The notes under the pieces are model-generated. The model made no database searches. It saw only the letters and a program-made list of their open reading frames with translations, and had not been told where the DNA came from. From the IMG/VR virus record IMGVR_UViG_3300028654_000001, positions 310,001 through 374,000 of that record: 64,000 nucleotides of DNA; one strand, given 5' to 3'. The position numbers and the translations under genes are program-made. Positions 1-34,834 of the stretch are shown in pieces (positions within the stretch are counted from its first letter, which is position 1; every line of letters begins with the position of its first letter).

Positions 1-3000
1 TGAAGTGGATTCCGTAGTTTCCGGAATTACTTGGACCAAGAATGAGATCCGTATTGGTGAAGCTTGCTACGGTAACGAGAGGTCCTATCCTAACAGAAAC
101 GGTGCCATTAGTGATAGTTCCGAGACCTGCTGATACAGTAACATCACCACCATTACCAACACCCGCAGTTCCACCTCGTATAGCGACGTTACCTCCGTTC
201 CCGTCGAAAGTGGTACCTCCTGCTAGAGTAACCCCCCCACCATTACCTGAAGAACCAGTGGAAGAACCCCCCACTAGAACGAGTCCACCAGCGGTCCCAG
301 AACCACTTGAAGTCCCAGAAGCAACTGTGAGGTTACCTGTGCTTGCAGTCCCAGTACCGTCTCCGGTACTGATAATTAGGGTACTTGTAGTACCAGAAGA
401 CCGATTAGAAGTACTAATGTGTGAGGCATTGGTGAATGTGAGTGCATTGGATGATATTAGTACATCCCCAGCAATGCTAGCTGTACCGCCAACAGACAAG
501 TCATTGGTCAAGAATAGTGCTGTCAGGGTAGGAGCATTTGACCAGAAGTTGTAGGTCCCATTGCTGGCATAGACTGTGTTGGGAGCCCCCTTCGGGAACG
601 ATTCAATAGCTGGAGGATCAACAATCTGACTTATCGTCTTCCCAATTGGCAAGTCAATAGTGGTTGGATCCACATTGTAGAAAGTATGGTTGGCGAGAAG
701 CGGATGCCCTTCGATACGATACAGGTCAGCCCCTGATACCGATTCTCCGCTGCCATTTGTACCTAGTAAGATCATGGCTTCAGATGGAGTGGTATTGAGT
801 TCCATCACATTGGTAACAATGGCCATCATCAACTCATCTCCAGCGGATACCTGAGCTGATCCAACACTAGTAAGGGAGTTCCTAACTAAGAAGGCCCTAC
901 CGACAAGAGCCCTAGTCCCACTAACCGAACCCAGGATTCTCTCATAGGTGGCGAAGATCTCTCCACCAGGACGATCCCCAGAGCCGATGAAAGCAGACCC
1001 ACCCCTATTGGTTCTGAAGTTTGTGAGAGAACTATAGCTTTGACTACCATCCACAAGGATTATCACATCCCCTGGAAGACCAGCAGAGGTCTCCGATGGC
1101 ATACTTGAGGTTTCAGTCTGGTCCAATGTTGTAGAGCTGCCTAAGCCAGCTACGCCAGATCCCACACCCGTGTTGGAAGTGTAAATCAAAGGGGAGGCAA
1201 AGTCATCCGAGAACCGCCCTCCATGAAAATCCATGTCTCGGTATAGAGCTCCTAGAGGGAGTCGGGTAGTAAGACCCAGATAGTCCGGGTTTGCCTCAAG
1301 GTCACTGAAGATGGATGAGCTTCCAATAGCCCCAAGCTTGGTAATTGGTCGAGGTGTTGATGCTCCACCAGATGCTACTGTTGGAGGGTAGGGTCGAACA
1401 CCACTTGGGTCTACTGGATCTTCATAACCAACATTTCTAGGTTCATAGGTATTTGGCTGAACAAAGTCTCCGCTGAGCCTCCCAGTGCCCAAACTAGTAA
1501 TGAATCCGATCGAAGCAAGCACCTCAAGGGGTTTCTGATTTGGTCTAGTTAGGGTGCTGACTGTAAGAGAGGTCGAGGCTAACTCAAATGCTGTAGCTGA
1601 ATCAAGGGGTCCTCTTTGATACCCAATATCGAGTCCTGAAGAACTAGATGTTTGCCAGGGGTCCCCTTGGTAGACTGACCTGGAATAATTGACCAAAGCT
1701 GTGGCCGTAGCCGGTAACGGCCCAGGCAGAATTGTGTTAGGACCTGGTATTGGTTGAGCTGGGGTAACAGCGGATGAGAGTGCCAATCGGAAAGGCTGGT
1801 TAAGATCAAATGACCCAATACCAAACCCGAAGACACTAGCCTCAATTACATAATCTCCAACTGCAAATGAACTAGGTGGGTGGGGGGCTTTGGAAATATC
1901 AATGGCGTCTGAATTTAGGATGAAGGTGCTAACCCCATTGTTCAAATCATCTCGTTCAATCCAGAATACAGGCCCATCGAAGGACTGACGAAGCAGATTC
2001 TTAGCCCCACCAGAGGTAAGTGGTGTCCGATCTGTAGCAATATTAAAAGCTGACCCATTTGCGGTATAGTCACCCGCTTCATAGATTGCGAAAAGCCTAG
2101 AAATCCCATAGTAGATAGGCAACTCTAAGCCTTGACGACCTAACCCTCTTGCCGTCGACAGGGCACCACCAATAGTAGGATCATCATTGAAATGCCTCAT
2201 CCCTGCACGAAGCGGTGCCCCTGAAGCCGTGTTGTAAGGTACTAGAGTAGAGAATATCGCACAGGTAGTAGTGAGCGTTGTGTAGTTTATGTAGTCAGGG
2301 TTGTCAAAGGTTAACCCCTCTTTGGACATCAACATGAAGTTGATACCCTGACTGAAATCAGCACTATTACCCGGAAGGATTGGAGCATAAACTGCACCAA
2401 ATCCTGGTACTAAGTGACGAGGAAGGGTTACATAATTACTAGTTGAAAACAAACCTAACGGGTCTGACGCCATAGGGCCATACCCGCTAAGTAGTGGTGG
2501 CATTATATTGCCAGCTGTTAGGTAGAGAACACTACTCGGGAAAGAGATGCTCTGAAAAGGTTGGAGAACCACGCTCTTTGACCCAGGATCTATATATGAT
2601 CCTGTGGTGACTGGAAGCAGACTCTTGTAAGGATAATTCCTGAATTTGCTCCAAAGCAGTACCCAACTAGTACTCAGTTCATACTCATCCGAAACCTCAT
2701 ATGAGGGTTGAATGAGAACCTCAGGGTTAGCACTGGGATTAACTAGAACCACATTGTGGATCGAATCTGGCCTCCTAGCAATACCTCTACCCCCACCATA
2801 CTGAATGTTAGTGGTGATATAGAGCTGAGAAGCAGCTGATGAGGACGTGGTAGGGAATGGACTGCCAGCACCGATGAACCTAACCACCAAGTCATCAGTA
2901 GGTCCAGGGTTGTGGGGAGTAACCTCAAACCTATGTTGGGGTAGACTAGCAATTGATCCCTCAATACGAATCTGAACAGAACCAACTCCGCGGCGAATGA

Positions 3001-4936
3001 TATAAGTGATTGAACTAGCTGTTGGAATTGATATTGAACTGGTTAGAACCGAATTGGTAACATCAGTGATCGGGTAGGAACCCTTCGCGGCTCCGGTAAA
3101 TATAACTATAGTATCCCCAGGGTACACTAGGTTCAGGAAGTTTATACTCCCGTCAATGAACTGAAAGGAACCCATCGAAGTACCGCTGCTACTTGATACA
3201 GGTACTTCGTTTAGGAACCTGACCTGATCGGCATCTGATCCAGGAAGAGATGTTTTGAACTGAGTTACATCAACTTGTAGAGTATCCCCAGTCCCATCAC
3301 CATCTACTGTCTCAGAACTCCAAATGGAAGCCGCCTTTTGGCTTACTGCCATGACGGGGTTAGCTAGTTGGAGGTCCCAAGTTACCGCTTGGGTAGCAAA
3401 GGGTGGAGTAGGTGGGGCTAAGGGGAAAGTTGGACCTGCAGTAATGGGTTTGACTATGAACTCTACTGGCTGCTGTATAGCAGCATCACTGAATGCAAAC
3501 CGAATATGATCAGGAGCATCTAAGGCTGTGATGCTAGGGATAGCCGGTGGTGTTTGACTGATCTTATCTTCAAAATGTACATAAGTACCTCTAGGATCAG
3601 TCCCTGACCTCTTGTGGGTTGAGCGAAGTTTACCTCTGAGTAACTTATCGAGACTGGATTGTAGTAGAGCTTGGTAGTCAAATCCTGTAGAACTAACTAC
3701 ATGCCTCAAATCCAGTAGATCTGTCTCAGTGATTTGGTCTGCAAAAAGCCCATCTGGACGACTAGATATGACCCTGACAACAGTACCAGCTGGATGAGCC
3801 TCAGCAACTGTACCGTTGACTCCACGTACTACAGCAATAGTGGTAGAGGTTATGCTTGCATAGGTGAGAAGCTCATCACCAATCTGAATAACAACTGCTG
3901 AAGCTGGACTTGCTGGTAAAGGAATGTTGGCAATTGAGACAAGAGTGATGTTTGTTGCGGTTGCTGTGAGTAGCGATGCAAGAGTCGGAATGGTTGAGAA
4001 TGTAGTAGCTCCGAATCGATCAGTGGCTGAAGGATTTCGATTGAAGGATCCATTTAAGTTTGGGAAGGGGTCACCACTCCACAAGGTGGCTGATCTTCTG
4101 AAGATAATTGCAATCGGTATTGCGTAGGCAAAACCATCTACTGTACCGAGACTGTTACCTGGGTTTCCATCACCAGCGCGGTATAACCCATTATCACCCA
4201 ACAGCTCACGCATATTGGAGAAGGTATAAGTTGGAATCGGTGAGCTTGAAGCACCTTGCGCGAATACGACGGAGGGGTCAAAACCGTCAGGACTTATGGA
4301 GAGGTTGTTTAGACCACTGACCACTCTAATTCTGTATAAAATCTGTGTTCTGTCAGTAGTCGGCTCACCGATCTCTGGATCAATGAGATCGTCTGGGAGG
4401 TAGCTTTGGCCTCCTTCCAAATTTCCAAACCTATAGATAGCCGATGCATTAGGTTTGTTGAGTGTTGAGGGGTTTGGGCTAATGAGAGCTTTGTAACATT
4501 CTAAAAACACGAAGTCTGCTCTTGCAGACCCCGCCGACACCGGTGGTGGGGGGAGTAGTATCCGATTTAGGGTGCTAGAGTTGTTGGGCTGACCAGGGGG
4601 GCTTCCTGTTTGAGTTCCGCACACAGGTATCAACCACCCGTTCACCACAGCCCACATAATGGACTGTTGATCCCCTGCCCTCTGTGGTCCAAACTGAAAC
4701 CAGTTGGAATATGAGGGATCTGTGATGTACACCTTTGATTGGTTTACAGAATTCCCAAGCCACCCGCTAGGGGTGCCACGAAGGACAAGCTTCCTCTGCC
4801 AATCCTCAGCAAGTTGTCCAACTAAGTTGAGGTCCGCGTCACATAGGGCGGCCCCTTCAATAAAAACCACACCTTCAAATTGGGTAGCTGTTGGGTCTAG
4901 GGTTCGACTGACGCCGGTCCCGAAGTTATCAGACAT
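1..4936 (-). CDS. Large tail fibre / baseplate-attached fibre protein (>1640 aa, 3' end beyond window edge)
   Basis: Not in the ORF track, presumably because no stop lies in the window. Manual translation from ATG at 4936 gives MSDNFGTGVSRTLDPTATQFEGVVFIEG... The same frame was spot-checked at 3760 (SRPDGLFADQITETDLLDLRH, a motif typical of large-phage fibre/baseplate proteins), at 540-580 (NTVYASNGTYNFW) and at the left edge (Gly-rich GGTAGVGNGGDVTVSAG...GNYGIHF). It lies downstream of the baseplate genes. Not every codon was checked. Confidence 0.8.
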   Translation of the reverse strand, partial: MSDNFGTGVSRTLDPTATQFEGVVFIEGAALCDADLNLVGQLAEDWQRKLVLRGTPSGWLGNSVNQSKVYITDPSYSNWFQFGPQRAGDQQSIMWAVVNGWLIPVCGTQTGSPPGQPNNSSTLNRILLPPPPVSAGSARADFVFLECYKALISPNPSTLNKPNASAIYRFGNLEGGQSYLPDDLIDPEIGEPTTDRTQILYRIRVVSGLNNLSISPDGFDPSVVFAQGASSSPIPTYTFSNMRELLGDNGLYRAGDGNPGNSLGTVDGFAYAIPIAIIFRRSATLWSGDPFPNLNGSFNRNPSATDRFGATTFSTIPTLASLLTATATNITLVSIANIPLPASPASAVVIQIGDELLTYASITSTTIAVVRGVNGTVAEAHPAGTVVRVISSRPDGLFADQITETDLLDLRHVVSSTGFDYQALLQSSLDKLLRGKLRSTHKRSGTDPRGTYVHFEDKISQTPPAIPSITALDAPDHIRFAFSDAAIQQPVEFIVKPITAGPTFPLAPPTPPFATQAVTWDLQLANPVMAVSQKAASIWSSETVDGDGTGDTLQVDVTQFKTSLPGSDADQVRFLNEVPVSSSSGTSMGSFQFIDGSINFLNLVYPGDTIVIFTGAAKGSYPITDVTNSVLTSSISIPTASSITYIIRRGVGSVQIRIEGSIASLPQHRFEVTPHNPGPTDDLVVRFIGAGSPFPTTSSSAASQLYITTNIQYGGGRGIARRPDSIHNVVLVNPSANPEVLIQPSYEVSDEYELSTSWVLLWSKFRNYPYKSLLPVTTGSYIDPGSKSVVLQPFQSISFPSSVLYLTAGNIMPPLLSGYGPMASDPLGLFSTSNYVTLPRHLVPGFGAVYAPILPGNSADFSQGINFMLMSKEGLTFDNPDYINYTTLTTTCAIFSTLVPYNTASGAPLRAGMRHFNDDPTIGGALSTARGLGRQGLELPIYYGISRLFAIYEAGDYTANGSAFNIATDRTPLTSGGAKNLLRQSFDGPVFWIERDDLNNGVSTFILNSDAIDISKAPHPPSSFAVGDYVIEASVFGFGIGSFDLNQPFRLALSSAVTPAQPIPGPNTILPGPLPATATALVNYSRSVYQGDPWQTSSSSGLDIGYQRGPLDSATAFELASTSLTVSTLTRPNQKPLEVLASIGFITSLGTGRLSGDFVQPNTYEPRNVGYEDPVDPSGVRPYPPTVASGGASTPRPITKLGAIGSSSIFSDLEANPDYLGLTTRLPLGALYRDMDFHGGRFSDDFASPLIYTSNTGVGSGVAGLGSSTTLDQTETSSMPSETSAGLPGDVIILVDGSQSYSSLTNFRTNRGGSAFIGSGDRPGGEIFATYERILGSVSGTRALVGRAFLVRNSLTSVGSAQVSAGDELMMAIVTNVMELNTTPSEAMILLGTNGSGESVSGADLYRIEGHPLLANHTFYNVDPTTIDLPIGKTISQIVDPPAIESFPKGAPNTVYASNGTYNFWSNAPTLTALFLTNDLSVGGTASIAGDVLISSNALTFTNASHISTSNRSSGTTSTLIISTGDGTGTASTGNLTVASGTSSGSGTAGGLVLVGGSSTGSSGNGGGVTLAGGTTFDGNGGNVAIRGGTAGVGNGGDVTVSAGLGTITNGTVSVRIGPLVTVASFTNTDLILGPSNSGNYGIHF

Positions 4937-5075
4937 GATTTTGGGATCTCCCGTGCATGTGCATCTGCACAAGGAAAAGCCAAAAGAGGATTACCGATCC
5001 CATTCCAAAATTGAATTGACTTCCGGTAGGGCCAGGTAGCCAAAACTTCCAGCAACATGAAAATCAAGTATTTTA

Positions 5076-5105
5076 TTGAGATCCAAACCCATCAGACGTA
5101 ATACT
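5076..5105 (+). promoter_or_regulatory. Sigma70-like promoter for the lipoprotein gene
   Basis: TTGAGA (5076-5081), 17-nt spacer, TAATAC(T) (5099-5105), with AT-rich sequence upstream. GAGG at 5110-5113 lies 6 nt before ATG 5120. Confidence 0.5.
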
Positions 5106-5107
5106 AA

Positions 5108-6796
5108 ATGAGGCGAATCATGTTCAAGACCCTAAGTTCAATAACCCTGGCTCTAGTGCTTACCGCTTGCGGAAGCAACTCAGTCGAAACTCCTGACACC
5201 CTGAATACCATCCAAGCGACCGGTGGCTCAAGCTCTAGTACCTCTAGTTCGACGTCAGTGGCCGGAACAGCTGGACTTGACACTTCGAAGGCGACCGGTG
5301 GCTCAAGCTCGGTTGAGAGCTCTACCGTCCCTGAGGCGACCGGTGGCTCAAGCTCCACGATTGGGACTACAAGTGCTCCGACGGGCACCGGCGGGCAAGG
5401 CCTAGGTACCGGAGGAAGTTCGGCCAAGTCTACTGGTGGGAGTTCAGCCAAGTCTACTGGTGGGAAACCCAGCACGGGTGGAGCTTCCACGTCGGGTGGC
5501 TCCAAGGCCACTGGCGGTTCAAGCTCGACGGGTGGCTCCAAGACTACAGGTGGGAGCTCAACTCAAGCTACAGGTGGATCACCAAGCACAGGTGGGAGCT
5601 CAACTCAAGCTACAGGTGGATCACCAAGCACAGGCGGGAGCTCTGCTCAGGCCACAGGCGGATCACCAAGCACAGGGGGAAGCTCTGCTCAGGCCACAGG
5701 CGGATCACCAAGCACAGGGGGAAGCTCTGCTCAAGCTACAGGTGGACAGGAGAGTACTGGGGGCTCATCAAGTACCGGCGGCAACTCAGCTACCGGGGGT
5801 ACCACGAATACTAAACTTACAGCGAAGTCTGTTTCAGTTGGTTCTTTTGCTAACACTTGTGCTGTAATAAGTGATGGGTCAGTTGAATGCTGGGGTGCTG
5901 AAACTTACCTTAACCTAGGGAGCAACGCGACAACTAATGCATCAGTTCCTACCAATGTCAACGGGATCTCGAATGCTGTTTCTGTCTCTGTGGGTCCTGA
6001 CCATACTTGCGCTGTTCTAAGTAACGGAACAATTCAGTGCTGGGGGGTAAATACTGCTGGCCAACTAGGCAATGGAACCACAACAAACAACTCAGCCGTG
6101 GTAGCAGGGATCACCAATGCCACTGCAGTGGCTTGCGCCCAATTTTATACTTGTGCCCTACTAAGCAATGGTACGGTTCAGTGTTGGGGTAGTGGAAGTT
6201 GGTCTGGTACTGGGTCAACAGCTACTAACTTAGTTCCCGTACCGGTCCCAGGATTAGCTACCCAAGCTACTGGTATCAGCACTCTTTTCATTAGTGCTGG
6301 GGACTACCAAGCCTGTGCGGTATCAAACGGTGGGTGGATTAGTTGTTGGGGTCCAAGTCAGCTAACACCTGTCATGATGACTACCGTTACTGGAACCACT
6401 ATTGCTACTACGGGAACCACTATTTCTTCAGGTCATGATAGTTCCTGCGGAGTACTTGATGACAGTTCTGTATACTGTTGGGGGAACAACAGATATGGTC
6501 AGCTCGGTAATGGGTCAACAACTAGCAGTACTAAACCAGTCCGAGCAATCTGGTATGGTGTCCTAGCTGTTAGTGTAGGATCTCAACATGCATGTGCGAT
6601 AATGACTGATGGAACAACTCAATGCTGGGGGAGCATTGGACCCAATAACAACCATCTGACCCCTGGAGTCACCCCTGGAGTCACCGGAGCTACTTCTATC
6701 AGTGATGGAACTCTATACACCTGTGTTATATTGAATAACGGAACAGTTCAGTGTTGGGACAACTCAGAAAACCTGACCACATATTCGAACTTTTGA
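5108..6796 (+). CDS. RCC1-repeat (ATS1/BLIP-II-like beta-propeller) lipoprotein with Gly/Ser/Thr-rich linker
   Basis: Signal peptide with lipobox LALVLTAC, about 200 aa of TGGSS linker, then repeated HTCAVLSNGTIQCWGxN..GQLGNG RCC1 blades. True start is probably ATG 5120 (MFKTLSS). Confidence 0.9.
   Translation: MRRIMFKTLSSITLALVLTACGSNSVETPDTLNTIQATGGSSSSTSSSTSVAGTAGLDTSKATGGSSSVESSTVPEATGGSSSTIGTTSAPTGTGGQGLGTGGSSAKSTGGSSAKSTGGKPSTGGASTSGGSKATGGSSSTGGSKTTGGSSTQATGGSPSTGGSSTQATGGSPSTGGSSAQATGGSPSTGGSSAQATGGSPSTGGSSAQATGGQESTGGSSSTGGNSATGGTTNTKLTAKSVSVGSFANTCAVISDGSVECWGAETYLNLGSNATTNASVPTNVNGISNAVSVSVGPDHTCAVLSNGTIQCWGVNTAGQLGNGTTTNNSAVVAGITNATAVACAQFYTCALLSNGTVQCWGSGSWSGTGSTATNLVPVPVPGLATQATGISTLFISAGDYQACAVSNGGWISCWGPSQLTPVMMTTVTGTTIATTGTTISSGHDSSCGVLDDSSVYCWGNNRYGQLGNGSTTSSTKPVRAIWYGVLAVSVGSQHACAIMTDGTTQCWGSIGPNNNHLTPGVTPGVTGATSISDGTLYTCVILNNGTVQCWDNSENLTTYSNF
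5546..5746 (+). repeat. 42-nt coding tandem repeat (~4.8 copies; TGGSS[T/A]QATGGSPS)
   Basis: Units start at 5546, 5588, 5630, 5672 and 5714. Copies 1-2 are identical and copies 3-4 near-identical. Confidence 0.9.
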
Positions 6797-6812
6797 ACCC
6801 CTGAAATAAGAA

Positions 6813-6856
6813 TAAGTGCAAGAGAGGGAGCCCTTCGGATCCCTCTCTTGCACTTA
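6813..6856 (+). terminator. Strong hairpin, probable terminator after the lipoprotein gene
   Basis: Perfect 17-bp inverted repeat taagtgcaagagaggga / tccctctcttgcactta around a loop containing c(TTCG)g, 17 nt after the stop. The U-tract is weak. Confidence 0.75.
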
Positions 6857-6927
6857 ACCAGAGCTACCTAATAACCAGAAACTTTGGCCCATAAACCCAA
6901 TAATCTACTGGTGTACTTAGTTATACC

Positions 6928-7116
6928 ATGAACAAGGATGTCGCCATTGGGTTCAAAGCCTCGCCTGAGTTCGAGCAACGTCTCCGGAAGCTACAGGAGC
7001 GGCTACAGGAGCGGCTACCAGGGGTTGACCTATCTAGGTCCCAGTTCATTAGGAATCTCATTGAACGAGGCGCAGAGTCACTGGAAAAAGAACTTAACAG
7101 CAGGGAGCCTCTGTGA
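6928..7116 (+). CDS. Ribbon-helix-helix (CopG/Arc-like) DNA-binding protein
   Basis: 62 aa with beta-strand VAIGFKA, helix PEFEQRLRKL and the typical LSRSQFIRNLIERG second helix. Contains a 12-nt duplication (LQER x2, 6990-7013). Confidence 0.75.
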   Translation: MNKDVAIGFKASPEFEQRLRKLQERLQERLPGVDLSRSQFIRNLIERGAESLEKELNSREPL

Positions 7117-8003
7117 TGTCTTCTTGGCAGGTTAGGAGTCAACTTTGCTCAACATGTGGGAAAACAGGTAAGTTTAAGGACGGGCGCCGTCAATGTTTAG
7201 CCTGCTATTATAGAGTAAGAAGAATTTGGAATAGAAACCACAAGGATAAGATAAGAAAATGGGGTACCGCCAGGTGGGGAAAGTACTTCTGTGTCTCCTT
7301 CGTTAATACCGATAAAAAACTAGTTGAGTGGCTTCACACTACTTGGAAGACTGCTACAAGAATAAACGAGTCCCTCAGAGGGTCCAATAAAACAGTTTAC
7401 CGAACTAGTGTACATAGTAAACATATGTGTGAGAAACTCATTCAATTAGGTATATTCCCTAGGAAGTCTAAAGTTCCTTGCCGTCTACCAAAGGTTCCTA
7501 CTGAATTTCAAGTCCCCTTTATACGTGGGTTGATTGATGGGGATGGAAGCGTAAATTTAACTAGGAACAAGGGTGTCGGTGGGGTCGTATTAAGGGTTTC
7601 ATTTGTGGACGCCTGGAACGAAGTAATCCAAGACCTAGCTGAGATTCTTAGGAGTAGGGGGATCAACCCCTTGGTCTATGAGAAGGAAAGGATAAGTCAC
7701 AGTGTGGCCCAACTACTAGCTCAAGGGAAACAAGCTGAAAAGCTTTGTCTCCTTCTCTATTCTGATTCGAGTTTTTGTATAGATCACAAGAGAAAAGTTT
7801 GGGAGTCCTACTTAGGGATACGGCAAGAATATGGTGGTTTAGTCATGGATCATATTCACTATAGTCAGAAGAAGCAACGGCCTTGGCTTGACTCGCTAGG
7901 TACCTGTCCTGACAATGAAGTAGCTAGAAAGTTTAACTTATCCTATGCGTGGGTGGCTAAAGTTCGTAGGTCTCTAGGAATCCCAGCGCACATCTCAACC
8001 TAA
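7113..8003 (+). CDS. LAGLIDADG-family endonuclease-like protein with N-terminal Cys4 zinc finger and C-terminal HTH-like domain
   Basis: FIRGLIDGDGSV LAGLIDADG motif preceded by LIQLGIFPRKS, typical of intein-type double LAGLIDADG proteins. N-terminal CSTC..CLAC; C-terminal PDNEVARKFNLSYAWVAKVRRSLGIP. TGATG overlap with the RHH gene. Confidence 0.8.
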   Translation: MMSSWQVRSQLCSTCGKTGKFKDGRRQCLACYYRVRRIWNRNHKDKIRKWGTARWGKYFCVSFVNTDKKLVEWLHTTWKTATRINESLRGSNKTVYRTSVHSKHMCEKLIQLGIFPRKSKVPCRLPKVPTEFQVPFIRGLIDGDGSVNLTRNKGVGGVVLRVSFVDAWNEVIQDLAEILRSRGINPLVYEKERISHSVAQLLAQGKQAEKLCLLLYSDSSFCIDHKRKVWESYLGIRQEYGGLVMDHIHYSQKKQRPWLDSLGTCPDNEVARKFNLSYAWVAKVRRSLGIPAHIST

Positions 8004-8398: not shown

Positions 8399-8758
8399 AT
8401 GTCCAACGAAGATTGTCCGAACTGCACTGGCCACACCAAACTGAACTGCATCCAAGATCAATTTGGTTCCAAACTAGCAAAACTACTGCAAGATACCTTG
8501 AAAGAAGTTCAGGCCCAAGTCTCTGAGGACTCCCCAGAGGTCAACGGCCGCAAAGAAGCATTCCCTCTCGAGCTTGCTGATCATCTTCTATGGCTCGCCG
8601 CCTCAGTCTACGTTGGGGAGGGATCCCCGGGTTCAGAAGCCATCTACGAGCTGGCAAAGGCTCTTGAAGAGGTTGGATCTGAACCTGATGAGGACGAAGA
8701 TCCAACGGGAGTTGAACCCCCAGGGCCACACTTGGTGTCAGGACATGACGTTAACTAG
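8399..8758 (+). CDS. Hypothetical acidic protein with N-terminal CxxC
   Basis: 119-aa ORF with protein-like composition, preceded by the GGTGTA motif 10 nt upstream. Confidence 0.7.
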   Translation: MSNEDCPNCTGHTKLNCIQDQFGSKLAKLLQDTLKEVQAQVSEDSPEVNGRKEAFPLELADHLLWLAASVYVGEGSPGSEAIYELAKALEEVGSEPDEDEDPTGVEPPGPHLVSGHDVN

Positions 8759-8769
8759 AGACGAATGAT

Positions 8770-9468
8770 TCAAGTAGTAAATCTCCACACCACCGTCATC
8801 GTACTAGTGGAGGGCTTATTTTGTACAGGAAAATTGAATACATTGCATAAAGTCTCAAACTGAGTCAAGTCCACCGTCGGGTCATAAGGGCCATTTGAAG
8901 GTGACACTGGGTTCTTGATCGACATGTCAGAGTTGATAGCCCCTCCAAGGATTCCCATCTCCACGAGAGGCCCGACAGCTTCTGATTCTGTGAAGGTGGT
9001 CGTGAAGTCCACTACATTGGTAGGAATCGAACTAGGATTCCCCAGAGAATCAACAAAGTTGGTAGAAGCGAACCTCTTGCGGGTGAGTTCAGCATAGAGT
9101 GCTCGTTGGGTTCTAGTTGGAGCTGGGGGGTGCATAGGATCCCACCCACTATCACCAGTCCCAACAGCCAAGGCAAAGGCTCCATTGAGCCCTGTTTCAC
9201 TGTTGTTTTTTAAGAGTCGGGCCACCAAAGTCGAGGCGTCAGCTGTAACCAGGTTCTTAAAGTTCCTAACACATTGAACTTTCCCGGTCCCCCCATCCCG
9301 AAGGGTCATGATCACATCACCACGTTTGATAGGTGAGATGTGCTCCTCATATTTTGCAGAGGTTAGCATACGAACTGCTGACTTGATCCGAGAGAACATA
9401 TCGATATTAGTCACCATTTGAGCACCAAAACTGCTTTCACAGACGTTAGGGAAGAACTGGTTAACCAA
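8770..9468 (-). CDS. Baseplate / tail-fibre attachment protein (tail-collar-fibre N-terminal-like fold)
   Basis: NLVT..A..LVARLL, ALAVGTG, TQRALYAELTRK, FTTTFTESEAVGPLVEMGI, KPSTSTMTVVWRF pattern of myophage baseplate proteins. Likely start is ATG 9417, overlapping the upstream stop. Confidence 0.75.
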   Translation of the reverse strand: MVNQFFPNVCESSFGAQMVTNIDMFSRIKSAVRMLTSAKYEEHISPIKRGDVIMTLRDGGTGKVQCVRNFKNLVTADASTLVARLLKNNSETGLNGAFALAVGTGDSGWDPMHPPAPTRTQRALYAELTRKRFASTNFVDSLGNPSSIPTNVVDFTTTFTESEAVGPLVEMGILGGAINSDMSIKNPVSPSNGPYDPTVDLTQFETLCNVFNFPVQNKPSTSTMTVVWRFTT

Positions 9469-13637: not shown

Positions 13638-14452
13638 CAGAAGTCACCCGAATGATTTTCAGCAACCACAACTCGGTTGATCTTTACACCGAGCCTATCG
13701 ATATCAAACAAACCTCGTGAGTACACTCGCAGATCTTCATAGCAGTAACTGGACATGTCTCCTCTACTGGCATCAAGGATCACACCCCCTTGAGTTGGGT
13801 TTGGGTTATAGGTATCAGTAAAGATGTACCTAATTGTGTACAGTGTATGTGCAGGTCTAATAATGTCCAGGAGTAGCCTAGTGTTTGAGTCAAGAGCAAA
13901 CACATTAACTGGGAAACCTGTAGTAGTGTCCGTTACATCGACCTGAAAACCAAATTCATCTGAGATATCAAGACCGGAGTTTGGATCCCTGGCAATCAGG
14001 AAGTTTTCGAACAGTAGAGGACCGCCAGAGAAGAACAGATCTACAGCTTCTAGCATCGCCGGTGGAATGGCCCCCTCGAAGTAGATTGCAATCACATTGA
14101 GTAGGAATGTTCGGAACTCCAAGTCATCATAGTTTGTATCTGGCAACTTGTTGTTCAAGAAAACCATGTACCCAATGATACTGTACAGAAAGTCTGTACG
14201 GGTCTTGGTAAAGTCCTGATCCGAGTTGACATCCTCCAAAGAGAGCTCGATGCGAGCCAGCTCAGTAGCTACTGCCGAAAGCTCTACTGAGTAATTTGGG
14301 CCTTTAATGGTGCTGATGTACGAACTGGGCAGGAAATCCATCAAGTTAGTGAAGATCGTCTGAGCTCGTTGAATGAGCCTCAGGTTGTACTCCTTCCCAG
14401 ATTGACTAGTTGTGAGGTTTAGCCTATCTGGATCTGTAACGAATCTGGGCAT
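13637..14452 (-). CDS. Baseplate wedge protein (P2 gpI / Mu gp48-like)
   Basis: LLLDIIRPAHTLY motif (xKPAH-like); immediately downstream of baseplate J. Confidence 0.75.
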   Translation of the reverse strand: MPRFVTDPDRLNLTTSQSGKEYNLRLIQRAQTIFTNLMDFLPSSYISTIKGPNYSVELSAVATELARIELSLEDVNSDQDFTKTRTDFLYSIIGYMVFLNNKLPDTNYDDLEFRTFLLNVIAIYFEGAIPPAMLEAVDLFFSGGPLLFENFLIARDPNSGLDISDEFGFQVDVTDTTTGFPVNVFALDSNTRLLLDIIRPAHTLYTIRYIFTDTYNPNPTQGGVILDASRGDMSSYCYEDLRVYSRGLFDIDRLGVKINRVVVAENHSGDF

Positions 14453-17400
14453 TAGGTGCTCGATGCGTAGGTGATGGTAAAGTTACCGAGTTCTACGAAC
14501 TCAACGTCAGCTGCCTCAATGTCATGGGATCCTGAATCCCCACGAACCACATAAGAAACTGTGTAAGTGTGATCAACAGGGAGGTCTACCGGACTCCCAG
14601 ATCCCGACAGGGAGATCACCACATGGTTCGCAGTCCTCCTCAGTAGCTCAGCTTGTTGAGTAGCTGCTGTTGTGAAACCGGCGGCTACCAGAGTAGCTGT
14701 ATCGGTATACCCTAGGATAACAGCACCCCCAGATCCGATGATGTAAGCTTGGTTAGCAGCCGAAGCCAAAGTGGAGAGCACTCCAACCAAGGTCATAGCC
14801 TCATCGTCTTCAAATACACCCTTGTGCTCTGTAATTAGACCCCCACCATCCGTGGTAGGTGAGGTCAAAGCATTGGTTAGGATGTAAACTACATTTGCTC
14901 CAATATCTAAGGATGGGAGATGCAAGTAGGCTGAGGTTATAGCCTCACGGAGCTTGCGTGACCCGTCCGCATAGGCCATCAAAGCCATGGGCAACACTAA
15001 GAAGCCGACACCCGGGGTCCCCTGGATAGCCCCAACGATACTGGACTGAGCCAGACCCTGTCCAATTAGTCTCGTGTTGGAGTCGTTGCTGACGTCAGAG
15101 CGAACAGCAGGATCAGTAGTATCTTTGGTTGACCCAGATTTTAGCTCCACCGTAACTTCTAGATCGACTAGATTCTCAATGGCCTCTTTGATGATTACAT
15201 CAGCCGTAATGTGACGAGTAGAGTTGACTGTCCTCTGGAGTTGTTGCAGAAGATCATTGATTACGTAGTTAACTGTGAAGTTCTCATCGTGGACATAGTC
15301 AACAGAGACTGTGGCCCCATTGACGATATCCGATGTGGCTGTCCTTTGGATAGCCGCTGGGGTAGTCGGAGTTCCTGCAATGACTTCATAGTCCGGGATA
15401 GTAGCTGTTGGGCCTTCGTATTCTATTGATCGATCAACACTAAAGACTCGAATAGTATCAGTATTTATCCCGATGCTTCCGAGAGGTATTGCTTGAGACC
15501 CTACCAATACATGGGATTCAGCATTCACTTGAATTGTATTGCCTGAGGGGACCCCATTAACTTGATTGATGGATAGGTAGTCGTTGGAGATCGTGCTTTC
15601 ACCATCAATGAGTGGGTCATCAACCTTGTAGAGAGCGTATCCAAGAGAGTTATCCAAAGCACCGGATACCTCTCCTATAACCGACACTACTCGCCGAACA
15701 GGTTGAAAGCTGAATATGAATCGATTATCAACACGGAAGCGGTAGTCAGCTGTCACCACATCATCGAAGTTCGTTACAACTTGACCTGATAGTGTGGGGT
15801 TCAACTTAAAGGTCCTGTAGTCGATGAGTTGGACTCCAACAAGGAGGTAGTCCAACCCTTGGGTCACATTCCTGACTCCGAGACCTTGTGTCAAGTTATC
15901 CAGGATCTCTGTGATCGGATTGTTCAGGGTGACTCGACTATCCTGAACCTGAAAGATCAAGTTAGTAGCATCAATGATGGTACATCGAATGTTGGTAGCT
16001 ACTTCGAAAGTGAAGGCAAACTTCTCAGTAATTTGTCGTTCCTTGAGACCTTGCGTCCAGATATCAACCTTGCCCCCAATGTGCTTGTGACGGACAGAAT
16101 CATAATCCCTCATCATGAGGGGGTCCCCGCTCTTGACTATCTTTGCCTTGACTATTCCAATTTGCTCTGCAGAAGTTGAGGCATACCCACCAGAGGTTCC
16201 ACTATCTACTGAATATCCAAGGAGGCATCTGGTAGTAAGATCCGCATTACTTTCGAGGTCAGACCCGAAGACGGTGGCATCGTTGTTGATAACTTGGAAA
16301 CCTGGAGCTCCAGATACGTTGGTGATCTGCCCAGCTGGTCGGTTACCATCTGAACCGGTTGTCTGAGCAACTATGTCAACGGTTATCTCGTAACGCTTGG
16401 TATCGAAGTTGAAGTAGGAGTCGGCTTGAGCAGCCAACATGATATAAGAGCCACCAACAACGAAGTTGACGGAAGGGATCCCAAGAGAGGAGTCCGCATT
16501 AGTCGATACAATGGTCCCAGTGGGTACCGGGAGGTCAAATGAGGGGCGCGTATATGTGTAGAAGGTTTCTTGTCCAACTGACGGCCTTCCAGGAAGCCTC
16601 TTCTTACTGATATTTCCAGCTAGCTTGTCGAACCCTGAGTCGATGATACTCTGAACTGCATCATCAGTTGTATACCCCAAGGCAAACTTAAGAGCTGTCT
16701 TGTAGGCACTCCCGGAGACAGGATCCGAAACTCCATCCCCATTGGCGTCATCGATCTGAAGAAGAGTAAGGAAACTTTGAGTACGGTGAACGAAGTCCAC
16801 CAAGAAGTAAAGACGCTCGGCTTCTGAGGTAAAAGGGTCAATCGAAACATCCCTTGTTGTCGACCCTGGGATCAAACTCACAAGAGCATCAACCCTCTGA
16901 ATCGAGTTGACGAAATCAGTCAGAACCTGAAACTGAGTCCTACCAGGAAGAGTTCTAATCGACGTGTCCAGGATGAGTGGTGTCCCCAAAACTTCTTGAG
17001 AGAAGGCACTCTCTATCTCGTTTCCAGTTAATGGATCATAATACACGCCAGTTACGACATAGTACAATGGATCTGTATCGGAAACAGCCGAGAACTGGTC
17101 ATCATTAATACTATCTGAAGTTCCCGATCGATTGTGCTGGAAGACGATGTACTCAATAAGTTGGTAGTCTTCGAGGGTAGACTTGAATCGGATGCTCTCT
17201 GTATAAGCCGATGTATTGTATGTAGTATCGAGTTGGGTTGCTAGTTCAGTACCAAACTCATCCTTTTGAGTCAGCTTGACCTCTAGAAATTGGCTACCAT
17301 TAGGGAATATCGTTTGATTAGCAGCAAATTGTGTAACCTTCTCATCAAAGGTTGTTGACTTATTTGTAACGGTTGCTGAATTGATTCGGTAGTATCCGGT

Positions 17401-17898
17401 AGTCCCACCTGCTGCTGTAGAGGCGTAGTAATTGTAACCTATGAAGTTGCTTGGAAGTGGGACACCGCTGGTACTAAATCTCTGTGCTGGCAAGGCGACA
17501 AATATGTTGACAACATCCTTAACCCTACTCACCTTGATTCCAGATGGGGTCTCCACCTGAAGGACATTCTCTTGCAGAACAAGGGTGACAGAGATAGTTG
17601 AGGCAACACTAACCCCACCAGCAATGTCTATTGTTCTAACTAGGATAGTGTTGGATCCAGGAGTCAATACCAAACCATCAGGGTAGCTAGATTGATTTGG
17701 AATAGTGAAGTTTGGGAGATCGAAGTTTACGAGGGTTGGATCTGAAACGAATGGAGCCCCGTTGATAGAAACCTGAATGTCTGAGGTTAGGTTGTCTACT
17801 GTCCCAGTGATGACAATAGCCTCTTGATTCGTTGAAAACACTAGGTTGGTAGTGAATCCAGAACCATCTCTATATGCAATCTGTGGAGCTTTGGCCAT
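14452..17898 (-). CDS. Baseplate J-like wedge protein (T4 gp6-like), extended
   Basis: VPTGTIVST, IVAQTTGSDGNRPAGQIT, VINNDATVFGSDLESNADL and GGKVDIW motifs of Baseplate_J. Confidence 0.9.
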   Translation of the reverse strand: MAKAPQIAYRDGSGFTTNLVFSTNQEAIVITGTVDNLTSDIQVSINGAPFVSDPTLVNFDLPNFTIPNQSSYPDGLVLTPGSNTILVRTIDIAGGVSVASTISVTLVLQENVLQVETPSGIKVSRVKDVVNIFVALPAQRFSTSGVPLPSNFIGYNYYASTAAGGTTGYYRINSATVTNKSTTFDEKVTQFAANQTIFPNGSQFLEVKLTQKDEFGTELATQLDTTYNTSAYTESIRFKSTLEDYQLIEYIVFQHNRSGTSDSINDDQFSAVSDTDPLYYVVTGVYYDPLTGNEIESAFSQEVLGTPLILDTSIRTLPGRTQFQVLTDFVNSIQRVDALVSLIPGSTTRDVSIDPFTSEAERLYFLVDFVHRTQSFLTLLQIDDANGDGVSDPVSGSAYKTALKFALGYTTDDAVQSIIDSGFDKLAGNISKKRLPGRPSVGQETFYTYTRPSFDLPVPTGTIVSTNADSSLGIPSVNFVVGGSYIMLAAQADSYFNFDTKRYEITVDIVAQTTGSDGNRPAGQITNVSGAPGFQVINNDATVFGSDLESNADLTTRCLLGYSVDSGTSGGYASTSAEQIGIVKAKIVKSGDPLMMRDYDSVRHKHIGGKVDIWTQGLKERQITEKFAFTFEVATNIRCTIIDATNLIFQVQDSRVTLNNPITEILDNLTQGLGVRNVTQGLDYLLVGVQLIDYRTFKLNPTLSGQVVTNFDDVVTADYRFRVDNRFIFSFQPVRRVVSVIGEVSGALDNSLGYALYKVDDPLIDGESTISNDYLSINQVNGVPSGNTIQVNAESHVLVGSQAIPLGSIGINTDTIRVFSVDRSIEYEGPTATIPDYEVIAGTPTTPAAIQRTATSDIVNGATVSVDYVHDENFTVNYVINDLLQQLQRTVNSTRHITADVIIKEAIENLVDLEVTVELKSGSTKDTTDPAVRSDVSNDSNTRLIGQGLAQSSIVGAIQGTPGVGFLVLPMALMAYADGSRKLREAITSAYLHLPSLDIGANVVYILTNALTSPTTDGGGLITEHKGVFEDDEAMTLVGVLSTLASAANQAYIIGSGGAVILGYTDTATLVAAGFTTAATQQAELLRRTANHVVISLSGSGSPVDLPVDHTYTVSYVVRGDSGSHDIEAADVEFVELGNFTITYASST

Positions 17899-33481: not shown

Positions 33482-34834
33482 TTATTTACCAGGGGGTAGG
33501 TTGTTGAAGTAAGTTTTGAAGGACTCCCTTTGCTTACTGCTAGCATTCAACAAGGTTAGATCATACTCATCGTCACTCAGTGCAGATGCTACATTAGGAT
33601 CAATGGAGTTAATCCCAGTACCACCCTTTTGACTCTGAGCGATAGCAGCAAAGAATGAGTCTTGTCTGCTTTGCTCTACAGCTTGTTCCGGGGTGAATCC
33701 TTGGGGTGGAGCTACATCCCCACCCCCAGTATCCTCAGGTGAGACATTCTTAACCTGACTGGCATTTGAAGCCAACGCGGGATCAGATTGGGACAGCTTC
33801 TGAACCTGGTAGTTGTTCTCAGTTGGACTATCCAACATGAAAGCAGACCTGACCGTGAACTGGAAGCTGTACTCGAGGGAGTAGGGGTTTGTATCGATTT
33901 CGGTAATGCTGAAGTTGTCAAACGAACCGATGTACAGAACACTGTCGTAGTAGATGTAGATCGACCCGACCAAAGAGAGTCTAGTCATCAAGTTACCCTC
34001 GAGACCAGAGACGTACAACCCACCATTGTTTCTGTATAGCAGATAGAGGCTCAGTAAGTTCTGGTAGCTGGCTGAATAGTTTCTAGCTACTCGGGTGAGA
34101 CCCGGGCCGCCACCGGTTGGGCCACTCGCAGCAGGTGGGTTGGCGTCAACCGCCATAAAGGCTGCAATCTTCCCAGAGGCTTCGAGCTTGTCTTGTTGAT
34201 CTCCCCAGTGTTCAACAATTGGGCCTTCCCTGGTGAAACCACCATCGGAGATGACCTTTTCGGAACTAAGCTTGAAAGTTTGTGGGTTGACAAGTAGCTG
34301 CAGTGGAGGTGTCTTCTTGATCCTATCCAAGGCTAGTAGAGTTGCACGAATCTCACTATGCTGAGCCGCTTGGAACTTCTGACCGAGATTACTCTTGTTT
34401 AGAGCTTCAAGGTTGACAGTCTTACTCGAACCCTTCCGTGAAGCACTTGCATTAGCAGCGCCCTTACTCTTCCAGTTACCATTGGTTTCAGTCTGGACTG
34501 AGGGGTCATTTACTATAGAAGCTGACCTATCAAGGGTTGTACCGTCATCCACGATGACTACAGACGGTGGAAGGATACCAACAACGAATAGCTTGGGGTT
34601 GGTCTTGGTCTGCGAAACTGGTATGAAGTCTAGGTTTTTGTCGTCGCTGAGTTCCAAGGATGAGTAGAACCCGAGCTGCTGGTAGATCATCGGTCCATAG
34701 TAGTCAGCAGCCTGTAGTATCTGATTCTGGACACTATTGGCATCACCTATAATGATGGGGCTCGGTTTGGCAATTGAGTTCCCGTTATCAACTACCGAAG
34801 AAAGTCCAGTACCCTGTGAGTTCGTATTAGCCAT
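33482..34834 (-). CDS. Tail tube initiator-like baseplate protein
   Basis: LQLLVNPQTFKLS...VEHWGDQ...YIGSFDNFSITE...PYSLEYSFQFTV; paralogous to the N-terminal part of 34846-35961. Confidence 0.75.
   Translation of the reverse strand: MANTNSQGTGLSSVVDNGNSIAKPSPIIIGDANSVQNQILQAADYYGPMIYQQLGFYSSLELSDDKNLDFIPVSQTKTNPKLFVVGILPPSVVIVDDGTTLDRSASIVNDPSVQTETNGNWKSKGAANASASRKGSSKTVNLEALNKSNLGQKFQAAQHSEIRATLLALDRIKKTPPLQLLVNPQTFKLSSEKVISDGGFTREGPIVEHWGDQQDKLEASGKIAAFMAVDANPPAASGPTGGGPGLTRVARNYSASYQNLLSLYLLYRNNGGLYVSGLEGNLMTRLSLVGSIYIYYDSVLYIGSFDNFSITEIDTNPYSLEYSFQFTVRSAFMLDSPTENNYQVQKLSQSDPALASNASQVKNVSPEDTGGGDVAPPQGFTPEQAVEQSRQDSFFAAIAQSQKGGTGINSIDPNVASALSDDEYDLTLLNASSKQRESFKTYFNNLPPGK

What the first reader, a model, noticed from the sequence alone, without database searches (positions are those of the whole stretch)
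5108..6856. Myxobacterial-style RCC1 lipoprotein moron in the tail region
Seen: opposite strand to the operon, with its own promoter-like sequence and hairpin, a lipobox, a long TGGSS linker with recent tandem expansions, and an RCC1 propeller. Established: lipobox + TGG-rich linker + RCC1 architectures are characteristic of Myxococcota, especially Polyangiales. Inference: a host-derived surface lipoprotein, possibly for superinfection exclusion or receptor masking (it sits beside the fibre gene) or for altering social cell contacts. It is also the best host clue in the window.
Basis: partly seen in the sequence, partly recalled or inferred. Interest (0 to 1): 0.65.

Follow-up and report, generated by a model that had tools for sequence, protein, structure and literature searches.

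The report
Phage RCC1 lipoprotein paired with fibre
A half-megabase phage carries, beside its long tail-fibre gene, a separately transcribed gene for an exported, lipid-anchored beta-propeller protein copied from a protein family that is hugely expanded in Polyangiaceae-type myxobacteria; it probably changes the infected cell's surface to block further phage attachment, and it is the best clue to the phage's host.

Summary
Window 5120(5108)-6796 (+) encodes a 558/562-aa protein with four parts: a lipoprotein signal peptide, a roughly 216-aa G/S/T linker with 42-bp x4.8 and 24-bp x2 tandem repeats, a seven-bladed RCC1 propeller (AF2 pLDDT 89, TM 0.90 to UVR8), and a strong hairpin after the stop codon. 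It lies antisense to the baseplate/fibre operon of a 512-kb phage.

New findings:
- Orthologues occur in six related phage contigs. They sit next to the long fibre gene (seen directly in four, inferred by synteny in two), at either end, always on the opposite strand.
- One contig keeps the scar of an older fibre+RCC1 pair.
- The gene has a conserved 29-nt promoter motif. This motif occurs 12 times in the genome (0 in shuffles) and otherwise precedes small ORFs.
- The same architecture (lipobox, TGG linker, seven blades, C-terminal F) gives at least 200 matches per genome in three related MAGs. These belong to one family together with a genome NCBI labels Polyangiaceae (RpoB 86-98% and 89%), at GC 0.53-0.59.

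The propeller alone is equidistant (35-41%) from many phyla. CRISPR spacers gave no host link.

The function is inferred, not shown: a receptor-masking or superinfection-exclusion lipoprotein that works like T5 Llp but is not a member of that family.

The parts
5076..5105 (+). Promoter motif: TTGAGA (-35-like), then 17-18 nt containing CCCATCA, then GTAATACT (-10-like).
   Evidence: One of 12 copies of a 29-nt motif in the 512-kb genome, against 0 in 10 Markov-1 shuffles. It is conserved upstream of the RCC1 orthologues in L013, L015, L017, L097 and L223. It is the only sigma-70-like hit in 4700-7300.
5110..5113 (+). Shine-Dalgarno-like GAGG, 6 nt before ATG 5120.
   Evidence: Invariant in five aligned orthologous loci, while the ATG at 5108 is not conserved.
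5120..6796 (+). Coding sequence of the RCC1 lipoprotein: 558 aa, or 562 aa if read from the alternative ATG at 5108. The stop codon is included.
   Evidence: ORF list; start choice from the alignment; Pfam and PHROG RCC1 hits.
5120..5170 (+). Signal peptide with lipobox L-T-A-C. The lipidated Cys codon is 5168-5170, followed by G-S-N.
   Evidence: Read from the sequence and checked by hand against the PS51257 rule. It is conserved as LALV[LV]TAC in the orthologues. SignalP and LipoP were not available.
5171..5812 (+). Low-complexity xTGGxxS linker of about 216 residues.
   Evidence: Composition 26% S, 25% G, 19% T. It is the only G/S/T-rich stretch among 715 ORFs of the genome. Orthologues keep about 200-260 residues here.
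5417..5465 (+). Tandem repeat, 24 bp x 2 (SSAKSTGG x 2).
   Evidence: TRF, 96% matches.
5546..5746 (+). Tandem repeat, 42 bp x 4.8 (TGGSS[TA]QATGGSPS units).
   Evidence: TRF, 93% matches, score 297.
5813..6793 (+). Seven-bladed RCC1-like beta-propeller. Each blade carries a C-x9-C-W-G pair, and the protein ends in Phe.
   Evidence: Pfam. AF2 pLDDT 89.1, pTM 0.87. Foldseek TMq 0.90 to UVR8 (4d9s), with RPGR, HERC2, RCC1 and BLIP-II also matched. Thirteen of the 14 Cys positions are invariant and one nearly so among 72 homologues.
6813..6856 (+). 19-bp GC-rich hairpin, 17 nt after the stop codon; a likely transcription stop or RNA-stability element.
   Evidence: -33 kcal/mol, z = -6.07. Hairpins stand at the same place in L013 (z = -2.9) and L017 (z = -3.2), with only a weak one in L015.
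2..4936 (-). 5' part of the long tail-fibre-like gene (2134 aa in the genome). It starts 183 bp from the lipoprotein start and runs in the opposite direction.
   Evidence: PHROG 1101 'tail protein', 2.9e-8. It follows the baseplate genes. Full length comes from the genome.
6928..7116 (+). 62-aa ORF on the same strand as the lipoprotein gene; ribbon-helix-helix-like by eye.
   Evidence: ORF list; no family hit; a partial match in L015.
7113..8003 (+). LAGLIDADG homing-endonuclease gene in the same + strand island.
   Evidence: PF14528, 2.6e-9; phrog_4645, 5.4e-21.
8399..8758 (+). 119-aa ORF of unknown function; the last gene of the + strand island.
   Evidence: ORF list; no hits.
8770..9468 (-). 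Baseplate-associated protein that precedes the fibre gene directly in relatives lacking the island.
   Evidence: phrog_5417, 1.4e-17; weak BW3TFN. In L002 its homologue is followed after 110 bp by the fibre gene.

Best explanation
The gene encodes a lipoprotein exported through the Sec/SPII pathway. After cleavage, its N-terminal Cys is lipid-anchored in the envelope of the infected cell. A flexible, roughly 216-residue G/S/T tether carries a compact seven-bladed RCC1 propeller that is probably disulfide-stapled and acts as a protein- or glycan-binding head.

It is transcribed on its own, from a phage-specific promoter that otherwise drives small ORFs elsewhere in the genome. Transcription ends at a strong hairpin, so its timing is uncoupled from the late tail operon around it.

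Its ancestor came from the lipobox/TGG-linker/RCC1 family that is hugely expanded in Polyangiaceae-type myxobacteria, the likely hosts. It has since been kept as a partner of the long tail-fibre gene.

The most likely job is to occupy or mask the envelope structure that the fibre recognises. Infected cells and their debris would then stop adsorbing phage of the same specificity. That would be superinfection exclusion and protection of progeny, in the manner of T5 Llp or T1 Cor.

Shown: the anatomy, the fold, the promoter class, the conservation, the linkage to the fibre and the architectural kinship. Inferred: export and lipidation, the disulfides, the time of expression, the binding target and the exclusion phenotype.
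For: - Anatomy and fold.
- Cys pairs: seven pairs, 13 of 14 positions invariant and one nearly so in 72 homologues, which fits an extracytoplasmic protein.
- Own transcription unit: a 29-nt motif occurs 12 times in the genome against 0 in shuffles. The other 11 copies precede 55-210-aa ORFs. The motif is conserved upstream of all six orthologues, and hairpins follow three of the four folded.
- Linkage to the fibre: orthologues lie between the baseplate gene and the fibre 5' end in the window, L015 and L223. They lie at the fibre 3' end in L013, L017 and, by synteny, L097. They are always antisense, and the fibre is the only constant neighbour.
- Cassette scar: L015 keeps a truncated older fibre N-terminus fused tail-to-tail to a truncated older RCC1 copy, next to an intact new pair.
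- Parallel case: a more distant relative (L006) has a non-homologous lipoprotein in the same divergent position. It has a lipobox, an acidic G/S linker, an MXAN_6577-like Cys-rich domain and a YWTD-like propeller.
- Pattern of divergence: the anchor and early linker are conserved, but the propellers have diverged to 37-50% identity. The fibre is likewise most divergent in its last ~230 residues.
- Host-family origin.
- Precedent: T5 Llp is a phage lipoprotein encoded next to the receptor-binding protein gene, and it blocks the receptor (PMC9586334). BLIP-II shows that a secreted bacterial RCC1-like propeller can be a tight protein binder.
Against:
- Regions flanking fibre genes are common landing sites for accessory genes, so adjacency alone could reflect permissive sites. 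A homing endonuclease sits in the same island.
- Relatives L003-L005, L007-L012 and L014 show no lipoprotein beside the fibre, so the partnership is not universal.
- The protein is about eight times larger than Llp or Cor and unrelated to them.
- The promoter's temporal class is unknown: the downstream ORFs have no known function.
- The host is not shown. No CRISPR spacer matched and no phage fibre was found in 383 genomes of that family.
- The nearest cultured phage by baseplate protein infects an acidobacterium, at 29% identity.
Confidence: 0.45

Rival explanations
1. Surface mimicry unrelated to the phage's own receptor. The phage copy joins or competes with the host's many RCC1 lipoproteins to alter cell-cell contact, vesicle cargo, predation or the host's coat. 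For example, it could exclude unrelated phages or disturb kin recognition.
For: The host-type family is very large, with at least 200 matches per genome in G001-G003. An RCC1 repeat protein of M. xanthus (MXAN_0889) is specific to outer-membrane vesicles (PMC4158809). The phage protein keeps every architectural feature of the host family.
Against: This reading does not explain why the gene stays beside the fibre in six phage contigs at two different positions. It also does not explain why an old fibre+RCC1 pair was replaced by a new pair in L015.
Confidence: 0.2
2. The propeller binds the phage's own fibre tip. It would act as a tethered decoy that holds incoming phage away from the membrane, or it would neutralise fibres.
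For: Both the propeller and the fibre tip are the fast-evolving parts of their proteins, and the two genes are linked.
Against: A cell-anchored binder of the phage's own fibre would trap progeny on debris, the opposite of what Llp achieves. There is no positive evidence.
Confidence: 0.1
3. A passenger with no role for the phage: a host gene fragment carried along by recombination or by the neighbouring homing endonuclease.
For: A LAGLIDADG endonuclease lies 320 bp downstream. The island is absent at this site in L002. The propeller's GC3 is at the 0.9th percentile of the genome.
Against: Five full-length orthologues stay intact at 37-50% identity, with conserved Cys pairs, signal peptide and promoter. 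L223 carries the gene without any endonuclease. The promoter is of the phage's own class.
Confidence: 0.07
4. A virion or fibre-associated RCC1 protein, as in Rak2-like jumbo phages.
For: RCC1-like proteins are virion components in phage GAP32 and are multi-copy in 121Q (PMC5259590). PHROG RCC1 families exist.
Against: A conserved SPII signal peptide and lipobox would send the protein out of the cytoplasm, where virions are assembled. It is antisense to the structural operon and has a different promoter. Identity to the phage RCC1 proteins in the reference set is only about 30%.
Confidence: 0.05

Closest known systems
T5 Llp (lytic conversion lipoprotein) and the T1/phi80/N15 Cor lipoproteins
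   Same: Phage-encoded lipoproteins encoded next to the receptor-binding protein or tail genes. Llp binds the phage's receptor FhuA and abolishes further adsorption (PMC9586334).
   Different: Llp and Cor are small single-domain proteins of roughly 60-80 residues (size from my own knowledge). This protein has 558 residues, a 216-residue tether and an RCC1 propeller. No sequence relation was found; the PHROG hits were RCC1 families only. The target and phenotype are unknown here.
Lipobox/TGG-linker/RCC1 paralogue family of Polyangiaceae-type MAGs (G001-G003; uncharacterised)
   Same: Same order of parts: a lipobox (LTAC, VAC, SC types), xTGGxxS repeats, a 'KL[VIT]A' junction, seven Cys-paired blades and a C-terminal Phe. 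Local identity is 48-57%, and 46% over 307 alignment columns.
   Different: The bacterial genes occur in very large numbers per genome, with linkers from 0 to about 250 residues and GC3 of 0.53-0.69. The phage gene is single-copy, has GC3 of 0.36-0.49, a phage promoter and a fibre neighbour. The tree does not resolve nesting.
BLIP-II (beta-lactamase inhibitor protein II, Streptomyces)
   Same: A bacterial seven-bladed RCC1-like propeller that works by tight binding to another protein (title of 3qhy; Foldseek E 1.6e-13). That it is secreted is from my own knowledge.
   Different: It is not lipidated, has no tether, is not phage-borne, and its blades differ (TMq 0.61).
Ltp of Streptococcus phage TP-J34
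   Same: A phage lipoprotein exposed on the host cell surface that mediates superinfection exclusion (PMC3952083).
   Different: From my own knowledge, not read here: Ltp comes from a prophage of a Gram-positive host and carries helix-turn-helix-like repeat domains that act at DNA injection. It has no propeller.
RCC1-like proteins of Rak2-like jumbo phages (GAP32 gp001, 121Q multi-copy)
   Same: An RCC1/BLIP-II-type domain in a very large phage (PMC5259590).
   Different: Those proteins are virion components. Whether they carry a lipoprotein signal was not checked. This one has a signal peptide and lipobox and is transcribed apart from the structural genes.

Membership tests
Bacterial lipoprotein (SPII substrate, PROSITE PS51257) | N-terminal K/R, an uncharged hydrophobic stretch, and a lipobox [LIVMFWSTAG]2-[LIVMFYSTAGCQ]-[AGS]-C with Cys at position 15-35. 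| tested here: met
   MFKTLSSITLALVLTAC has K3 and Cys17 (Cys21 from ATG 5108), checked by hand on the sequence. It is conserved in five orthologues.
Bacterial lipoprotein (SPII substrate, PROSITE PS51257) | Cleavage by signal peptidase II and acylation of the Cys. | not testable with these tools
   Needs globomycin sensitivity, lipid labelling or mass spectrometry.
RCC1 / RCC1-like domain beta-propeller (PF00415, PF13540) | Repeat matches above the Pfam gathering score. | tested here: met
   RCC1_2 at 105.7 bits (cut-off 22) and RCC1 at 90.2 bits (cut-off 21.7).
RCC1 / RCC1-like domain beta-propeller (PF00415, PF13540) | Seven-bladed propeller fold. | tested here: met
   AF2 pLDDT 89.1; seven four-stranded blades; TMq 0.90 to UVR8 and 0.81 to human RCC1.
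Polyangiaceae-type lipobox/TGG-linker/RCC1 family | The shared order of parts: lipobox, xTGGxxS linker, seven Cys-paired blades, C-terminal aromatic residue. | tested here: met
   Side-by-side reading of 12 fetched bacterial ORFs against the phage protein. Matches extend into the linker (query residues ~40-400).
Polyangiaceae-type lipobox/TGG-linker/RCC1 family | Phylogenetic nesting of the phage protein inside the bacterial family. | tested here: inconclusive
   The quick ML tree puts the window protein in a weakly supported (SH-aLRT 83) group with the G001-G003 and Polyangiaceae rows. Phage rows split in two, and by BLAST the propeller is 35-41% identical to many phyla.
Llp/Cor-type receptor-blocking phage lipoproteins | A phage lipoprotein encoded beside the receptor-binding protein gene. 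| tested here: met
   183 bp from the fibre start in the window. Adjacent to the fibre in L013, L015 and L017, and by synteny in L097 and L223.
Llp/Cor-type receptor-blocking phage lipoproteins | Sequence or structural homology to Llp or Cor (small single domain). | tested here: not met
   Only RCC1 families were hit in Pfam and PHROGs; the protein has 558 aa and a propeller fold. It is therefore not a member, only a possible functional analogue.
Llp/Cor-type receptor-blocking phage lipoproteins | Binds the phage's receptor and abolishes adsorption. | not testable with these tools
   The host and the receptor are unknown and the phage is uncultured.
Moron (autonomous accessory gene in a phage operon) | Own promoter and terminator, on the opposite strand or between conserved genes, and absent from some relatives at that site. 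| tested here: met
   Promoter motif; hairpin. L002 has 110 bp where the window has 3,833 bp.
Moron (autonomous accessory gene in a phage operon) | Recent foreign origin shown by base composition. | tested here: inconclusive
   Propeller GC3 is 0.36 against a genome mean of 0.51 +/- 0.06, the 0.9th percentile. This deviates away from the bacterial family (GC3 0.53-0.69), the codon-usage score is ordinary (61st percentile), and the neighbouring fibre has GC3 0.40.
Virion RCC1 proteins of jumbo phages | Incorporated in the particle. | not testable with these tools
   Presence in the particle needs a virion proteome. The conserved lipobox argues against assembly in the cytoplasm.

The most novel reading that the evidence does not exclude
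The fibre gene and the RCC1 lipoprotein gene form an exchangeable specificity cassette: the fibre recognises an envelope structure, and the tethered propeller, recruited from the host's own surface-protein family, shuts that structure off in infected cells. This would be a new structural class of receptor-masking protein. It would sit in a clade of 0.3-0.5-Mb phages that would be megaphages of Polyangia myxobacteria, which I did not find described in the held literature.
Probability: 0.25. Interest if true: 0.75.

Novelty: new variant of a known kind. Interest (0 to 1): 0.58.

Why it matters
- Host clue. It gives a concrete, testable host hypothesis for an uncultured clade of very large phages: a moderate-GC lineage of a Polyangiaceae-type family. 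Such hosts are hard to assign, and the myxobacterial virus groups singled out in the one survey I read are 33-62 kb.
- Possible new exclusion protein. If the function holds, the small Llp/Cor paradigm extends to a large, modular protein with a lipid anchor, a long tether and a propeller. Its binding head evolves as fast as the fibre tip.
- A handle on the host family. A huge family of myxobacterial RCC1 lipoproteins, for which I found no functional study beyond one vesicle proteome, would gain a functional lead through surface recognition by phages.
- Transcription. The promoter motif, often placed 4 nt before the ATG, offers a first view of the transcription programme of such a phage.

Tried and rejected
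- CRISPR host link: 47 spacers from a G002 array and 4 from G003 gave only 13-18-nt chance matches to the phage genome and 17 related contigs. Searching the repeat in 383 genomes of that family found almost no further arrays.
- Co-binned phage or prophage: the fibre N-terminus was not found in those 383 genomes.
- Complex prediction of three fibre-tip chains with the propeller gave no answer. This is not evidence either way.
- RCC1 relatives in IMG/VR by pattern: none found with the single protein. Orthologues came instead from fibre-based loci and the word search.
- Tree of propeller domains: unresolved, with many long branches, so no direction of transfer is claimed from it.
- Rejected early idea: that GC 0.49 rules out a myxobacterial host. 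The relevant MAGs have GC 0.53-0.59.
- Rejected: a spanin or lysis role. The protein is far larger than a spanin, and in the window it lies 6.4 kb from the holin-like cassette.
- The large representative search was not run, because the word search and family scans had settled the protein's identity.
Full report
**Setting.** The window is bases 310,001-374,000 of a 512,571-bp IMG/VR virus record with terminal repeats, rated complete. GC is 0.49, and the genome carries 42 tRNA genes and a tmRNA. Around the finding, the - strand carries a myovirus baseplate and fibre operon. It includes a Baseplate_J protein (14452-17898), wedge-like proteins, a phrog_5417 protein (8770-9468) and a 2134-aa 'tail protein' whose start is at 4936. 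So 'tail region, beside the fibre gene' is correct.

**The observation.** ORF 5108-6796 (+) has a signal peptide ending in the lipobox L-T-A-C and a linker of about 216 residues (26% S, 25% G, 19% T). The linker contains tandem DNA repeats of 42 bp x 4.8 (93%) and 24 bp x 2 (96%). RCC1 repeats score far above the Pfam cut-offs. A 19-bp hairpin (6813-6856; -33 kcal/mol; z = -6.07) follows the stop codon. An AlphaFold model of residues 236-562, built on 72 aligned homologues, has pLDDT 89 and is a seven-bladed propeller. It matches UVR8 (TMq 0.90), RPGR, HERC2, RCC1 and, more loosely, BLIP-II. Each blade has a C-x9-C-W-G pair; 13 of the 14 Cys positions are invariant and one nearly so across the 72 sequences. 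I read this, by inference, as disulfides of an exported protein.

**Transcription unit.**
- The generic promoter scan is not above chance. Its single hit, however, lies in a block that is invariant upstream of the orthologues while the flanks have diverged: TTGAGA, about 17 nt containing CC..TCA, then CGTAATACT (also L223).
- The 29-nt motif occurs 12 times in the genome and never in ten shuffles. Every copy sits 2-59 nt before an ORF on the same strand.
- The other eleven copies precede ORFs of 55-210 aa at 34-89 kb and 157-188 kb. Six of these have the ATG exactly 4 nt after the motif. Those ORFs have no known function.
- The gene therefore uses a promoter class of the phage itself, different from whatever drives the surrounding structural genes. 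Whether that class is 'early' is an inference.
- The same alignment shows that the ATG at 5108 is not conserved, whereas GAGG and the ATG at 5120 are. The protein most likely starts MFKTLSS.

**Relatives in other phages.** Fibre-based and word-based searches gave orthologues with the same signal peptide, linker and propeller in L013, L015 (P0207), L017/L018 (P0180), L223 (P0160) and L097.
- In the window, L015 and L223, the gene lies between the phrog_5417 baseplate gene and the fibre 5' end.
- In L013 and L017 it is convergent with the fibre 3' end; the 758-aa ORF in L017 is a fibre C-terminus.
- In L097 it lies before the holin-like gene that follows the fibre in the window's genome.
- It is always antisense to the operon, and the fibre is the only constant neighbour.
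- L002 has just 110 bp between the baseplate gene and the fibre. L223 has the RCC1 gene alone. The window has three more + strand ORFs, including a LAGLIDADG endonuclease.
- L015 keeps a scar. A fibre N-terminus (residues 1-275) is fused tail-to-tail to an RCC1 fragment (residues ~187-414 of the P0160 type, 63% identity), next to an intact RCC1-fibre pair. I read this as an old pair replaced by a new one.
- L006, a more distant relative, has a different lipoprotein at the divergent position. It has a lipobox, an acidic G/S linker, an MXAN_6577-like Cys-rich domain (1.6e-8) and a YWTD-like propeller. Its only taxon-named homologue is from a Polyangia bacterium.
- Other relatives show no such gene in the 10 kb on either side.

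**Pattern of divergence.** The signal peptide and early linker are well conserved. The propellers differ much more: the window propeller does not even list the other phage propellers among its 14 best BLAST hits, while L013, P0160 and P0207 are 45-50% identical to one another. The two complete fibres are 57% identical overall but only 32-41% over the last ~230 residues.

**Cellular relatives and the myxobacterial claim.**
- With the propeller alone, the best hits are 31-44% identical and come from many groups. These include Comamonadaceae, Gallionella, Chloroflexota, SAR324, Actinomycetota, Acidobacteriota, Bdellovibrionota and Myxococcota. The tree is unresolved.
- The whole architecture is another matter. 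Among the loci of the species-genome scan, I picked five genomes whose hits reached into the linker. Three of them give at least 200 matches each, reaching into the linker at 48-57% local identity: G001 and G002 (labelled 'uncultured delta proteobacterium') and G003 (labelled 'Myxococcales bacterium'). An Archangium and a SAR324 genome, searched alongside, give about 20 matches.
- The twelve ORFs fetched from those three genomes mostly show a lipobox (six by my rule, several more by eye), xTGGxxS repeats, a KL[VI]A junction and five to seven Cys-paired blades; seven end in GF.
- RpoB of G001 is 97% and of G002 86-98% identical to G003. A genome NCBI labels Polyangiaceae (G036) is 89% identical. 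Other Myxococcales and Polyangiales are 74-76%, Bdellovibrio 62% and SAR324 55%.
- G001, G002, G003 and G036 fall in one family of the genome collection, with 383 species and genomes of 1.8-16.3 Mb.
- Their GC is 0.53-0.59, compatible with phages of GC 0.46-0.52.
- The bacterial genes have GC3 of 0.53-0.69, the phage genes 0.36-0.53.
- Taken together, a large bacterial family, a single-copy phage gene and diverged phage orthologues favour an old capture from such bacteria. A recent import is unlikely.

**Host.** The architecture, the L006 lipoprotein and the base composition all point to Polyangia-type myxobacteria, but nothing direct does. Fifty-one spacers gave no match. The repeat is rare in the family. 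No phage fibre was found in the 383 genomes. The nearest cultured phage by baseplate protein infects an acidobacterium, at 29% identity. I put the host assignment at about even odds.

**Function.** The protein is built to leave the cytoplasm, stay lipid-anchored and present a rigid binding head on a long tether. It is expressed apart from the virion genes, and it travels with the fibre gene. The closest working model is T5 Llp, a lipoprotein encoded next to the receptor-binding protein that inactivates the receptor FhuA (PMC9586334). Cor and Ltp are further precedents, and BLIP-II shows an RCC1-like propeller acting as a tight binder. It is not a member of any of those families. Rival readings are surface mimicry for other ends, binding of the phage's own fibre, a passenger gene, and a virion protein as in Rak2-like phages (PMC5259590). 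These are scored in their own section. A complex prediction of fibre tip with propeller gave no answer.

**Verdict.** Its myxobacterial reading is supported at the level of architecture but not by propeller homology alone. Its functional guess is made more likely by conserved linkage to the fibre, but it remains untested. I rate it a new variant of a known kind (phage lipoproteins that modify the cell surface), of moderate to good interest.

Noticed in passing
G000 34446-34474, 67364-67392, 73411-73439, 74986-75014, 76658-76686, 87587-87615, 88765-88793, 157253-157281, 184177-184205, 187309-187337, 187950-187978; window 5077-5105: A phage promoter class: a 29-nt motif, TGAGAT(C)-N4-CCCCTCA-N3-GTAATACT. 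It occurs 12 times against 0 in shuffles, and six copies have the ATG 4 nt downstream, which suggests leaderless or very short-leader mRNAs for small ORFs.
   Followed up: partly
window 7113-8003 (with 6928-7116): A free-standing LAGLIDADG homing-endonuclease gene (PF14528 2.6e-9, phrog_4645 5e-21). Its start overlaps the end of a 62-aa ORF that looks ribbon-helix-helix-like by eye. Both lie in the same + strand island, inside the tail operon.
   Followed up: partly
L015 4832-6310: A recombination scar in a related phage: a truncated fibre N-terminus (residues 1-275) fused tail-to-tail to a truncated RCC1 lipoprotein copy, next to an intact RCC1-fibre pair.
   Followed up: yes
L006 8113-9411 (-): A different lipoprotein, divergent from the fibre gene of a more distant relative (GC 0.62). 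It has a lipobox, a D/G/S/M-rich linker, an MXAN_6577-like Cys-rich domain and a YWTD-like propeller. Its only taxon-named homologue is from a Polyangia bacterium.
   Followed up: partly
G000 306662-308374 (window coordinates -3338 to -1626): Directly downstream of the fibre lie a holin-like 155-aa membrane protein, a 194-aa protein and a 200-aa protein with a cleavable-looking signal peptide and paired Cys. All are conserved in relatives. This may be a lysis cassette.
   Followed up: no
G000 457935-479593 and 498602-498674: A block of 41 tRNA genes plus a tmRNA-like gene, and a separate tRNA with anticodon CTA (it reads TAG; ARAGORN calls it Pyl). This may be a suppressor tRNA. No stop-codon recoding was needed to read the genes studied here.
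   Followed up: no
G000 168067-168924 (+): The only other convincing lipobox ORF in the genome: 285 aa, with a signal peptide ending LLAISC.
   Followed up: no
G001-G003 (e.g. L179-L190): Three related Polyangiaceae-type MAGs each give at least 200 matches to the query, from a very large set of lipobox/TGG-linker/RCC1 genes. Some carry Cys-rich inserts in the linker, as does the phage orthologue P0180. The function of this family is unknown.
   Followed up: partly
L007 4881-7499 and 9998-14047; L008 4881-7508 and 9998-14053: Two relatives carry two fibre paralogues in tandem: a shorter one of about 870 aa right after the baseplate gene, and the long one 2.5 kb further on.
   Followed up: no
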